A stretch of 63,768 nt of DNA, filler included, from Octopus bimaculoides (lineage: Eukaryota), in assembly GCF_001194135.2 (NCBI RefSeq). It is 5 parts of 4 records of this genome, joined end to end, with 100 filler letters (N's around TTAATTAATTAA, not from the genome) between each part and the next. Parts side by side here need not be neighbours in the genome. Positions count along the whole stretch, not along the records: positions 62,712 to 63,768 come from NW_026423355.1; 4 more parts are not named here. One strand, given 5' to 3'. The notes under the pieces were generated by a model that was not told the origin of the DNA, did not search any database, and saw nothing but the letters and a program-made list of their open reading frames with translations. Below are positions 62,712 to 63,768 of this stretch, piece after piece. The position numbers were made by a program, and so were the translations under genes. Within the stretch, counting starts at the first letter, position 1, and each line of letters opens with the position of its first letter.

Positions 62712-63768
62712 CTTGTTGTGCTTGTAACATGTGATAAAATATAACTAATATTTTTTAATGAATCCTTTGAATGTGAGACATAATCTGGTATAGATGTAAT
62801 AGTTACTATATCTCTAGATATGAGTTGGTATGTTATAAATGTAACAGTTACGATGTCACCATATAAAACATAATCTGGTACAGATGCAACAATTACTGTA
62901 TCTCCAGATATTGCATGGTCTGATGTAGTATTAGTTACTATATCTCTAGATATGCCATGATCAGGTATAGATATGACAGTTACTATGTCTCCAGATGTGA
63001 CATAATCTGGTATAAATGTAATATGTACCGTTTTTCTGGATGCAACATATTCTGGTTTAGATGTAACAGTTACTGTATCTCTAAATATTACATAGTCATG
63101 TAATGAGAATGTAACACTCATTGAATCTCCAGGTATGTGAAAATCTGGTATAGAAGTAACAGTGACTGTATCATCTAGTATAGATATAGCAGTTATAGTA
63201 TCAGAAAAATTGGCACGGTCTGATATAGACTTCATAGTTAATGTATCTCCAGAGGAAACATGATCTGGTATAGTAGTAGTAGTAGTTACTGTGGCTCCAG
63301 ATGTGACATGGTCTAGTATAGAAGAAAGAGTTATTGAATCTCCAGATGTGACATGATCTGGTACAAACTTAACAGGTGAAATATCTCTAGATGTGACATA
63401 GTCTGGTATAGAAGTAACACTTATTGTATCTCCAGATATGATGTGGTCTGTTATAGAAGTCATAACAACTGTATCACCAGATATGACACGATCTGGTATA
63501 GAAGTAACAGTTACTGTATCAGCAAATGTGACATGGTCTGGTATAAACTTAATAGTTAGTCTACCTCCTGATATAATATGATCTGGTAGAGATGTAACAG
63601 CTAATATATCTCCAGATGTGACATGATCTAACATAGATGTAAGAGTTATTATATCAGTAGACATTACACGGTCAGATACAGTAGTAACAGTTACTGTATC
63701 TCTTGACATGGCAATTTTATGATCAGTATATTGTTCTTCTTTTGATGATTTTATTGCTTTCAAAGATG
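62712..63768 (-). CDS. Partial exon encoding ~21 tandem 15-aa repeats (consensus DTVTVTSIPDHVTSG), mucin-like or beta-repeat; product unknown
   Basis: About 350 stop-free codons, open to the window edge and to the scaffold spacer; diverged 45-bp units with only in-frame indels. Confidence 0.75.

What the first reader, a model, noticed from the sequence alone, without database searches (positions are those of the whole stretch)
62712..63768. Stop-free array of ~21 diverged 15-aa repeats: probable novel structural or adhesive protein exon
Seen: 45-bp units are strongly diverged, yet about 350 codons of AT-rich DNA contain no stop. Every length change is in-frame (16-, 10-, 16- and 14-residue units), which argues for coding selection rather than a satellite. 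The consensus D-T-V-T-V-T-S-I-P-D-H/Y-V-T/I-S-G has alternating beta-branched residues, a periodic Pro-Asp turn, regular Asp/His and no Cys or Trp. Inference: a beta-solenoid or cross-beta type repeat, or an O-glycosylated mucin-like stalk, possibly metal-binding. It does not match the reflectin, suckerin or beak His-rich motifs that I know.
Basis: partly seen in the sequence, partly recalled or inferred. Interest (0 to 1): 0.7.

Follow-up and report, generated by a model that had tools for sequence, protein, structure and literature searches.

The report
Open-frame 45-bp repeat array, coding unproven
A 1-kb run of about 21 diverged 45-base repeats really does keep one reading frame open, and it may be part of a loosely constrained repeat protein known from nowhere else, but an ordinary non-coding minisatellite cannot be ruled out from this fragment.

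Summary
On the minus strand, 62714-63766 is open for 351 codons. It holds 21 units of consensus DTVTVTSIPDHV(I/T)SG, with unit lengths of 15 (x17), 16 (x2), 10 and 14 residues, and degenerate units at both edges.

The "no stop in AT-rich DNA" argument is much weaker than it looks. Only 1 of 135 single-base changes to the consensus makes a stop. Neutral simulations expect about 2 stops and give zero in 12-17% of runs.

Residue-level selection is nearly absent:
- Variability is flat across codon positions (0.35/0.33/0.31).
- dN/dS is about 0.9-1.0, and values of 0.5 or below are rejected.

Three signals still favour a maintained frame:
- All four length changes are multiples of three.
- The unit has codon-like composition (GC by position 0.53/0.47/0.07, top 1.35% for resistance to stops).
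- The two Asp codons per unit are kept far more often than neutral expectation (90% against 63%, P about 0.0003).

No true homologue turned up in 1.8 billion protein representatives, Pfam, PDB or Rfam. The AlphaFold2 model has low confidence (pLDDT 49).

Verdict: weakly constrained coding repeat about 0.45, non-coding minisatellite about 0.35. The beta-solenoid and metal-binding ideas are unsupported. Interest is modest.

The parts
62714..63766 (-). Open reading frame of 351 codons with no stop, cut off by both edges of the piece
   Evidence: Six-frame translation. The other five frames have 13-60 stops.
62768..63700 (-). Core array of 21 units of 45 bp (15 residues), consensus GATACAGTAACTGTTACATCTATACCAGATCATGTCATATCTGGA = DTVTVTSIPDHVISG
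   Evidence: TRF, segmentation, codon alignment, MAFFT alignment A1. Mean pairwise identity is 0.676 at every lag from 1 to 10.
62714..62767 (-). Degenerate 22nd unit (KDSLKNISYILSHVTSTT). The array runs into the low-coordinate edge of the piece.
   Evidence: Alignment of the tail to the consensus. The ILSHVTS stretch corresponds to IPDHVTS.
63701..63727 (-). Degenerate partial unit (TDHKIAMSR, compare PDHVISG) at the upstream end of the array. It contains an in-frame ATG at 63707-63709.
   Evidence: The frame also stays open for the 13 codons further upstream, to the edge of the piece.
63248..63295 (-). 16-residue unit. The +3 bp lies within an (ACT)5 run, which TRF reports as (TAG)5.3 at 63271-63286 on the + strand.
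63173..63202 (-). 10-residue unit. A 15-bp deletion lies between the two AGAT motifs of the unit and causes the local 30-bp period that TRF reports at 63143-63203.
63080..63127 (-). 16-residue unit (DSMSVTFSLHDYVIFR), net +3 bp
62903..62944 (-). 14-residue unit (DIVTNTTSDHAISG), -3 bp
63477..63496 (.). Example, in unit 63476-63520, of the dyad symmetry CCAGAT-N8-ATCTGG found in the unit consensus. A second dyad is ACAGT-A-ACTGT. The arms are not maintained by covariation.
   Evidence: The consensus dimer folds with z -2.3 and -1.9. Cells paired are 73.8% against 73.9% in shuffles.

Best explanation
The piece is most likely a fragment of a protein-coding exon, or of an exon that was coding until recently. 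It would encode a 15-residue tandem-repeat region of a lineage-restricted protein. Selection appears to keep only three things: the reading frame, two Asp residues per repeat, and a hydrophilic Thr/Ser-rich make-up. Every other residue drifts at about the neutral rate.

Such a region would act as an extended spacer or stalk, possibly O-glycosylated on its 30% Thr/Ser. It would not be a precisely packed fold. The conserved Asp residues flank the beta-prone TVTVTSI and HV(T/I)S stretches, and I infer that they act as charged 'gatekeepers' that keep this Val/Ile/Thr-rich chain soluble. A role in cation binding is an alternative.

Shown by the tests: the open frame, in-frame-only length changes, a codon-like unit, excess Asp retention, and near-neutral change elsewhere. 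Inferred: that the region is translated at all, the spacer role, and the gatekeeper role.
For: (1) All four length changes are multiples of three (+3, -15, +3, -3), and no unit has a net 1-2 bp change, alongside 189 substitutions. Human data imply that only about 10% of indels genome-wide are multiples of three (my derivation from PMC2493042: 94% of non-3n and 46% of 3n coding indels are removed, leaving about half 3n). I put the neutral probability of this pattern at roughly 0.004-0.03. That allows for the ACT slippage and the AGAT microhomology, and for the fact that 3-periodic composition favours lags that are multiples of three.
(2) The unit is codon-like. GC by codon position is 0.53/0.47/0.07 and 73% of first positions are purines. 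The 3-base compositional periodicity has P=0.02, yet the self-match at lag 3 is only 8/45, so this is not a decayed trinucleotide repeat. The unit is in the top 1.35% of shuffled 45-mers for resistance to stops. Only 0.6% of random arrays keep any frame open.
(3) Asp/Glu is kept in 90.5% of cells against 63% +/- 10.5% under a column-permutation null (P=0.0003, about 0.002 after correcting for six classes). The first-position G changed in 2/42 cells at Asp codons against 22/62 at Val codons (Fisher P=0.00025), while the Asp wobble base varies freely, mostly through synonymous T to C changes.
(4) Replacements are more conservative than permuted ones (mean BLOSUM62 3.06-3.10 against 2.79-2.83, P=0.005 and 0.033). 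Thr+Ser content is above neutral expectation (0.298 against 0.256, P=0.02 and 0.004).
(5) Identity is a uniform 68% at every lag with strict length conservation. From my own knowledge, that is more typical of old coding repeats than of homogenising non-coding arrays.
Against: dN/dS among units is 0.98 (bootstrap 0.49-1.85), or about 0.86 by permutation (33 synonymous codon changes against 29.6 expected, P=0.25-0.31). Variability is flat across codon positions (0.347/0.325/0.305). Several four-fold third positions are as invariant as the Asp sites (ACT 0/21, TCT 2/21).

Zero stops is only mildly unexpected given this consensus (P=0.12-0.17). No true homologue was found in 5.8 billion protein clusters or 1.84 billion representatives. 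The 8 hits obtained are unrelated proteins that also have a 15-residue period. No Pfam family reaches its cut-off and there is no PDB match. AlphaFold2 confidence is low.

The unit contains two dyad symmetries (fold z about -2), a feature often reported for satellite DNA (my own knowledge). A chain that is 24% Val+Ile is unusual for an unconstrained spacer. Only about 1.3% of human minisatellites intersect coding sequence (2,944 of 228,486; PMC8096271), so the prior is low. There is no start, stop, signal peptide, splice site or transcript evidence within the piece.
Confidence: 0.45

Rival explanations
1. This is an old, non-coding 45-bp minisatellite. One unit was amplified once and the copies then decayed neutrally without homogenisation. 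The open frame is a by-product of a consensus whose triplets in that phase (GAT ACA GTA ACT GTT ACA TCT ATA CCA GAT CAT GTC ATA TCT GGA) are nearly all two or more mutations from TAA, TAG or TGA, plus some luck with indels.
For: Only 1 of 135 single-base changes to the consensus makes a stop. About 1.9 stops are expected and P(0) is 0.12-0.17, under a null that predicts the other frames correctly. Variability is flat across codon positions and dN/dS is about 1, with values of 0.5 or below rejected. Pro, Gly, His/Tyr and hydrophobic columns are kept at the neutral rate. The unit has dyad symmetries. There is no homologue, family or confident fold. Two of the four in-frame indels have a mechanical explanation: ACT slippage, and deletion between two AGAT motifs 15 bp apart. 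Gene callers do read such arrays as proteins: P0007 in L001 is a young 45-bp array nested in other repeats. The prior is low, since about 1.3% of human minisatellites touch coding sequence (PMC8096271).
Against: Several independent coincidences are needed. The unit must be codon-like (top 1.35%). Stops must be absent (about 0.15). No length change may fail to be a multiple of three across 189 substitutions (about 0.004-0.03 by my estimate). Asp codons must be retained in excess (P=0.0003-0.002). Replacements must be conservative (P=0.03). The dyad arms show no maintenance, so no DNA-level function is evident either. Uniform 68% identity with strict unit length and no gradient between neighbours is unusual for a non-coding array.
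Confidence: 0.35
2. This is a relic of a coding repeat, either a pseudogenised exon or the remains of a transposable-element ORF. The unit and the Asp pattern were shaped by past translation, and the array now drifts neutrally but has not yet been hit by a stop or a frameshift.
For: This reading explains both the codon-like consensus with Asp retention and the near-neutral substitution pattern. It also explains the absence of any annotated or predicted relative.
Against: Most of the 20% divergence would have to predate the loss of function. Otherwise about 2 stops and several frameshifts are expected. There are no Pfam or PHROG-type transposon domains in the frame. Nothing in the piece marks inactivation.
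Confidence: 0.1
3. The repeats form a regular beta-solenoid or cross-beta stack with one 15-residue coil per unit and a Thr-x-Thr face, and the protein is a structural, adhesive, ice-binding, mineral-binding or metal-binding protein.
For: The period of 15 residues equals the coil length of the spruce budworm antifreeze beta-helix (my own knowledge). The consensus has alternating beta-branched residues. AlphaFold2 places one or two strands per unit. The Asp positions are conserved.
Against: A packed solenoid needs conserved inward-facing hydrophobic positions and turn residues. Here the hydrophobic, Pro and Gly columns are kept no better than neutral expectation, and dN/dS is at least about 0.6. 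The Thr/Ser columns are kept in 71% of cells against 66% expected (P=0.08). The AlphaFold2 model has mean pLDDT 48.7 and no residue at 70 or above, although AF2 is known to over-predict confident beta-solenoids for repeats (PMC11795689). There is no Cys ladder, and there is no Pfam hit to CfAFP, RTX, Als or flocculin repeats at E up to 10. His is present in only 9 of 21 units.
Confidence: 0.07

Closest known systems
Non-coding minisatellite or satellite DNA (unit 10-100 bp)
   Same: Head-to-tail 45-bp units with more degenerate units at the edges. Short dyad symmetries within the unit. Substitutions are spread evenly over all three phases. An internal microsatellite expansion, (ACT)5, and a deletion mediated by microhomology are present.
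   Different: All length changes are multiples of three. The unit has codon-like 3-base composition. Two triplets that read as Asp are conserved at their first two bases only. There is no homogenisation and no gradient of similarity between neighbours.
Mucin-type PTS tandem-repeat domains (for example MUC1 with a 60-bp/20-residue unit) and other weakly constrained repeat spacers
   Same: A long run of short repeats in one open frame. The chain is Thr/Ser-rich (30%). Residues drift while frame and composition are kept. Relatives cannot be detected by sequence search.
   Different: Pro is only 4% and is not conserved. Val+Ile reach 24%. Two Asp residues per unit are conserved. No signal peptide or flanking domains are available to anchor the assignment, and the units are far more diverged than in typical mucin variable-number tandem repeats (VNTRs).
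Spruce budworm antifreeze protein (CfAFP) and other insect Thr-x-Thr beta-solenoids
   Same: A 15-residue period and a T-V-T-V-T motif in the consensus.
   Different: There is no Cys ladder. The Thr columns are not conserved beyond neutral expectation. No Pfam match was found, and the model confidence is low. This array has 21 or more units, whereas CfAFP is a small protein.
Thr/Val/Ile-rich tandem repeats of fungal adhesins (Als 36-residue and Flo1 45-residue repeats)
   Same: The composition (Thr, Val, Ser, Ile), beta-prone stretches, and tandem repeats in a single open frame.
   Different: The unit length and motif differ. There is no Pfam hit to Candida_ALS or Flocculin repeats, and no homologue in the protein libraries.
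Zfx/Zfy acidic activation region (Pfam PF04704)
   Same: A weak profile match in four stretches. The region is also rich in Asp, Val, Thr, Ser, Pro and His.
   Different: The score is 15.4 bits against a cut-off of 25. The resemblance is compositional, and no zinc fingers or other context are available.

Membership tests
Tandem repeat array (minisatellite class, by anatomy) | Head-to-tail copies of a 10-100 bp unit | tested here: met
   TRF reports period 45, 19.8 copies and a score of 306. 21 units were aligned.
Non-coding minisatellite | No constraint on reading frame: length changes of any size, and stops at the neutral rate | tested here: inconclusive
   There are 0 stops against about 1.9 expected (P=0.12-0.17), which is compatible. 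All four length changes are multiples of three, which fits poorly.
Non-coding minisatellite | Substitutions indifferent to codon position and to amino-acid consequence | tested here: inconclusive
   Variability is flat (0.347/0.325/0.305) and dN/dS is 0.86-0.98. However, Asp codons are retained in excess (P=0.0003) and replacements are conservative (P=0.03).
Protein-coding sequence | Excess of synonymous over non-synonymous change (dN/dS clearly below 1) | tested here: not met
   33 synonymous codon changes were seen against 29.6 expected (P=0.25-0.31). The pooled Nei-Gojobori (NG86) dN/dS is 0.98. Values of 0.5 or below are rejected, and 0.7 is marginal at P=0.17.
Protein-coding sequence | Open frame, in-frame indels and codon-like 3-periodic composition | tested here: met
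Protein-coding sequence | Transcript, splice sites, start and stop, and conservation in orthologues | not testable with these tools
   Only 1,057 bp are available. Exact 24-mers and 30-mers from the piece are absent from the genome, metagenome and viral collections.
Beta-solenoid repeat protein (for example CfAFP, 15-residue coil) | Conserved inward-facing hydrophobic positions and turn residues in every coil | tested here: not met
   Hydrophobic columns are kept in 0.81 of cells against 0.84 under the null, Pro in 0.57 against 0.52, and Gly in 0.57 against 0.57.
Beta-solenoid repeat protein (for example CfAFP, 15-residue coil) | Confident solenoid model or a profile match | tested here: not met
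   AlphaFold2 gives mean pLDDT 48.7 and pTM 0.49. There is no Pfam hit to CfAFP or any solenoid family at E up to 10, and no PDB sequence match at E up to 10.
Mucin-like PTS domain | Pro/Thr/Ser-dominated composition kept by selection | tested here: inconclusive
   Thr+Ser is 30% and lies above neutral expectation (0.298 against 0.256, P=0.02 and 0.004). Pro is 4% and is not retained beyond neutral expectation.
Mucin-like PTS domain | Signal peptide, flanking Cys-rich or anchoring domains, and O-glycosylation | not testable with these tools
   Both ends of the ORF lie outside the piece.
Zfx_Zfy_act (PF04704) and Phage_SSB (PF16773) | Score at or above Pfam's gathering threshold | tested here: not met
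   The scores are 15.4 and 22.2 bits against a cut-off of 25. The Phage_SSB match covers only 19 residues.
Structured RNA | Rfam match, or base pairs maintained by covariation | tested here: not met
   The best Rfam match is 13.5 bits against a gathering score of 86.7. The pairing of the dyad arms equals the shuffled expectation.

The most novel reading that the evidence does not exclude
The array encodes a so far unknown kind of regular beta-rich repeat protein. Each 15-residue unit would be one coil or rung, with Thr-x-Thr-x-Thr on one face and a ladder of conserved Asp residues that binds Ca2+ or a mineral, ice or sugar surface. It would be a structural or adhesive material protein restricted to one animal lineage, with no detectable relative among 15 billion predicted proteins.
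Probability: 0.06. Interest if true: 0.65.

Novelty: new member of a known kind. Interest (0 to 1): 0.3.

Why it matters
If the frame really is maintained, this is an orphan repeat protein in which selection acts almost only on frame, two Asp residues per repeat and hydrophilicity. That would be a clean natural example of composition-level rather than residue-level constraint, and a candidate lineage-specific extracellular stalk or matrix component.

If the array is non-coding, it is a useful cautionary case. A 350-codon stop-free frame in 33% GC DNA can arise from a repeat unit whose triplets are far from stop codons, and both gene callers and human readers will mistake it for a protein. Either way the practical lesson is the same. 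Open frames in diverged repeats should be judged against a null built from the repeat consensus, not against random sequence.

Tried and rejected
- **Homology.** Pfam gave nothing above cut-off and the PDB sequence search gave nothing at E up to 10. The word-indexed search of 5.8 billion clusters found nothing. Exhaustive HMMER over 1.84 billion representatives gave 8 hits with E from 2e-10 to 3e-4. All are unrelated proteins with their own repeats of roughly 15 residues, sharing at most PDHV or DH.
- **The best in-register hit.** P0007 was traced to its DNA (L001). It is a young 45-bp array nested in other repeats. Its unit matches ours at 23/45 at the best rotation, which shuffles reach 4.5% of the time. 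This is a chance resemblance.
- **Source and relatives by DNA.** An exact repeat 24-mer and a flank 30-mer are absent from the GTDB genomes, JGI metagenomes and IMG/VR. There was no blastn match in plasmids or phages. A prokaryotic, viral or plasmid origin in those collections is therefore rejected, and a eukaryotic origin is inferred but not shown.
- **RNA or DNA structure.** Rfam gave nothing. The dyad symmetries are real in the consensus but show no covariation.
- **Origin from a decayed trinucleotide repeat.** This would explain both the codon-like unit and the in-frame indels without any coding. It is rejected because the self-match at lag 3 is only 8/45 and there is no internal sub-repeat beyond position-specific composition.
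- **Higher-order repeats or homogenisation.** Rejected, because identity is 0.66-0.69 at all lags from 1 to 10.
- **'No Cys or Trp' as a signal.** Rejected, because it is expected by chance (P about 0.33).
- **Structure.** AlphaFold2 on the single sequence gave low confidence, so I ran no fold search on the model. I did not make a pseudo-alignment of shifted repeats, because AF2 confidence on repeats is not good evidence (PMC11795689).
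Full report
**1. What is there**

The piece (62712-63768, 1,057 bp, GC 0.33) is almost entirely a tandem array. Tandem Repeats Finder reports a 45-bp period, 19.8 copies and 63% matches at 62777-63655. Six-frame translation shows one frame without a stop: the minus strand from 63766 to 62714, 351 codons, cut by both edges of the piece. The other five frames have 13-60 stops.

Segmentation gives 21 units between residues 23 and 333 (window 62768-63700). 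Seventeen have 15 residues, two have 16, one has 10 and one has 14. The consensus is DTVTVTSIPDHV(I/T)SG, encoded by GAT ACA GTA ACT GTT ACA TCT ATA CCA GAT CAT GTC ATA TCT GGA. The 18 codons at the low-coordinate end, and the 9 codons just upstream of the array, are further and more degenerate units. There is no Cys or Trp.

**2. Is the open frame surprising?**

It is much less surprising than it looks. Of the 135 possible single-base changes to the consensus, only one (GGA to TGA) creates a stop. I tested this with three neutral nulls:
- independent mutation from the consensus, using the observed spectrum and 20.4% divergence;
- permutation of each unit's substitutions among sites with the same consensus base;
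- permutation of whole alignment columns among sites with the same base, which preserves shared ancestry.

All three expect 1.9-2.1 stops and give zero stops in 12-17% of trials. The same null predicts the other frames well, with 17 stops observed against 13.1 expected and 17 against 15.8 for the two other frames that are open in the consensus.

Given this consensus, then, stop-freeness carries little weight. What does carry weight is that the consensus itself is unusual. It lies in the top 1.35% of shuffled 45-mers for distance from stop codons. Only 0.6% of arrays simulated from random 45-mers of the same composition keep any of the six frames open.

**3. Is there selection on the encoded residues?**

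Almost none. The evidence is as follows.
- Nucleotide diversity among units is 0.347, 0.325 and 0.305 at codon positions 1, 2 and 3.
- Pooled Nei-Gojobori dN/dS over all unit pairs is 0.98, with a bootstrap range of 0.49-1.85.
- Permutation tests expect 29.5-29.7 synonymous codon changes, and 33 are observed (P=0.25-0.31).
- Forward simulations reject dN/dS of 0.5 or below (0 of 400 runs have as few synonymous changes). A value of 0.7 is marginal (P=0.17) and 1.0 fits.
- Several four-fold degenerate third positions are as invariant as any replacement site (ACT 0/21, TCT 2/21 and 2/20).
- The absence of Cys and Trp is expected by chance (P about 0.33).

**4. What does point to a maintained reading frame?**

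(a) Length changes. An alignment of each DNA unit to the consensus, made without reference to codons, finds only +3, -15, +3 and -3. No unit has a net change that is not a multiple of three, alongside 189 substitutions. Two of these events have mechanical explanations: (ACT)5 slippage, and a deletion between two AGAT motifs 15 bp apart. The 3-periodic composition also raises the chance that microhomologies sit at lags that are multiples of three. Even so, human figures imply that only about a tenth of neutral indels are multiples of three (derived from PMC2493042). I estimate the neutral probability of this pattern at 0.004-0.03. This estimate rests on indel spectra from other organisms and is the weakest number in the argument.

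(b) The unit is codon-like. GC is 0.53/0.47/0.07 by codon position and 73% of first positions are purines. The 3-base periodicity has P=0.02 and is not explained by a decayed trinucleotide repeat, because the self-match at lag 3 is only 8/45.

(c) The two Asp codons per unit are the one clear residue-level signal. Asp/Glu is kept in 90.5% of cells against 63% +/- 10.5% under column permutation (P=0.0003, about 0.002 after correcting for six classes tested). Their first-position G changed in 2/42 cells, against 22/62 for the G of Val codons (Fisher P=0.00025). Their third position varies freely, in 4/21 and 10/21 cells, nearly all synonymous T to C.

(d) Replacements are somewhat more conservative than permuted ones (P=0.005 by unit shuffle and 0.033 by column shuffle). 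Thr+Ser content is above neutral expectation and hydrophobic content is below it.

(e) Pairwise identity is a flat 0.66-0.69 at all lags from 1 to 10, with no higher-order period and no gradient between neighbours. This is an old array that has kept its unit length without homogenisation.

**5. Relatives and known families**

None were found.
- Pfam has nothing above its gathering scores. The best matches are Phage_SSB at 22.2 bits over 19 residues and Zfx_Zfy_act at 15.4 bits, both below the cut-off of 25.
- There is no PDB sequence match at E up to 10.
- The word-indexed search of 5.8 billion clusters gave nothing.
- The exhaustive HMMER search of 1.84 billion representatives gave 8 hits with E from 2e-10 to 3e-4. 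Every one is an unrelated protein that happens to have its own repeat of about 15 residues, at 15-28% identity. Those E-values reflect matching periods, not homology.
- The two most suggestive hits were examined. P0004 shares only PDHV. P0007 aligns in register (xTLxLSxLxDHLIxx), but its DNA is a young 45-bp array nested among other repeats in a GenBank assembly (L001). Its unit matches ours at 23/45 at the best rotation, a level that shuffles reach 4.5% of the time.
- Exact 24-mers and 30-mers from the piece are absent from the prokaryotic genome, metagenome and viral collections. Plasmids and phages give no blastn match.
- Rfam gives nothing.

The source is therefore probably a eukaryotic genome outside these collections. 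I could not test for transcripts, orthologues or paralogues.

**6. Structure**

AlphaFold2 on the single sequence gives mean pLDDT 48.7 and pTM 0.49, with no residue at 70 or above. The model has short strands at the repeat period. AF2 is documented to over-predict confident beta-solenoids for repeat sequences (PMC11795689), so even a confident model would have been weak evidence, and this one is not confident.

On the DNA side, the unit consensus contains two dyad symmetries, ACAGT-A-ACTGT and CCAGAT-N8-ATCTGG. They make the consensus dimer fold somewhat better than shuffles (z -2.3 and -1.9), and they explain why the opposite strand translates to a look-alike peptide. The arms decay independently, with 73.8% of cells paired against 73.9% in shuffles, so no structure is being maintained.

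**7. Weighing the readings**

Under pure neutrality four things must coincide: a codon-like, stop-resistant unit (about 0.01-0.02), no stops (about 0.15), only in-frame length changes (about 0.004-0.03), and excess Asp retention (about 0.0003-0.02). Under coding, one must accept dN/dS near 1 for 13 of 15 positions, a Val/Ile-rich yet unconstrained chain, dyad symmetries arising by chance, and no relative anywhere.

The prior that a minisatellite is coding is low. In human, about 1.3% intersect coding sequence (2,944 of 228,486; PMC8096271). It is higher for old, length-conserved arrays with a period that is a multiple of three. My rough likelihood ratios span two orders of magnitude, and the posterior for coding runs from well under 0.2 to above 0.8 depending on the indel null and the prior.

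I commit to the following: a weakly constrained coding repeat 0.45, a never-coding minisatellite 0.35, a recently dead coding relic 0.10, and a regular folded beta-solenoid or cross-beta protein 0.07.

**8. How it would work if coding (inference)**

It would be an extended spacer or stalk with 30% Thr/Ser. Only the frame, the hydrophilic balance and two Asp residues per 15 would matter. The Asp residues bracket the beta-prone stretches (D-TVTVTSI-PD-HVxS-GD). Charged residues flanking aggregation-prone segments are the classical 'gatekeeper' arrangement (my own knowledge). That would explain why Asp alone is conserved in a chain that would otherwise tend to aggregate. Binding of a cation by the Asp ladder is an alternative. 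Nothing in the piece bears on secretion, glycosylation or tissue.

**9. Verdict**

The specific fold and function proposals are unsupported. Novelty is that of a new member of a known kind, either an orphan low-constraint repeat region or a minisatellite family. Interest is modest (0.3). The question can be settled quickly once the source genome and transcriptomes are searched.

Noticed in passing
window 62768-63700 (every unit); example 63477-63496: The 45-bp consensus contains two dyad symmetries, ACAGT-A-ACTGT and CCAGAT-N8-ATCTGG. They make the opposite strand translate to a look-alike peptide (PDMT*SGIDVTVTVS). They also give fold z-scores of about -2 to -3, but they show no covariation between the arms.
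   Followed up: yes
window 63271-63286: An (ACT)5 run, which is (TAG)5.3 on the + strand, lies inside one unit. This micro-expansion replaced part of the unit and produced the 16-residue unit with five Thr in a row.
   Followed up: partly
window 63143-63203: TRF reports a local 30-bp period here. It is caused by a 15-bp deletion between the two AGAT motifs of one unit.
   Followed up: partly
L001 1081-1374 (NCBI GCA_022702875.1, JAKGBN010110864.1): An unrelated young 45-bp array (6.5 copies, 93% matches) is nested among 76-bp and 80-bp repeats. It is recorded in the protein library as a 197-residue 'protein' (P0007). This is a clear case of a minisatellite being called as a gene.
   Followed up: yes
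P0004 residues about 150-400 (protein library hit): A 783-residue protein carries a 15-residue ATPDHVMATQSQGLQ repeat N-terminal to a region that looks like a P-loop NTPase. It shares only PDHV with the window's unit. I did not look up its origin.
   Followed up: partly
window 62768-63700, alignment columns of Asp codon 2 (GAT/GAC), Thr codon 3 (ACA/ACT), Ile/Thr codon (ATA/ACA): A few sites are nearly dimorphic across units (10/21, 11/21 and 10/20 changed), while other sites with the same base are invariant. Site heterogeneity is significant for G, A and T sites (chi-square P=0.004, 0.008 and 0.0001). It may reflect founder subtypes of the unit rather than independent mutation.
   Followed up: partly
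exhaustive protein search: HMMER E-values as low as 2e-10 were obtained against proteins that share only the repeat period with the query. E-values for repeat queries should not be read as evidence of homology.
   Followed up: yes
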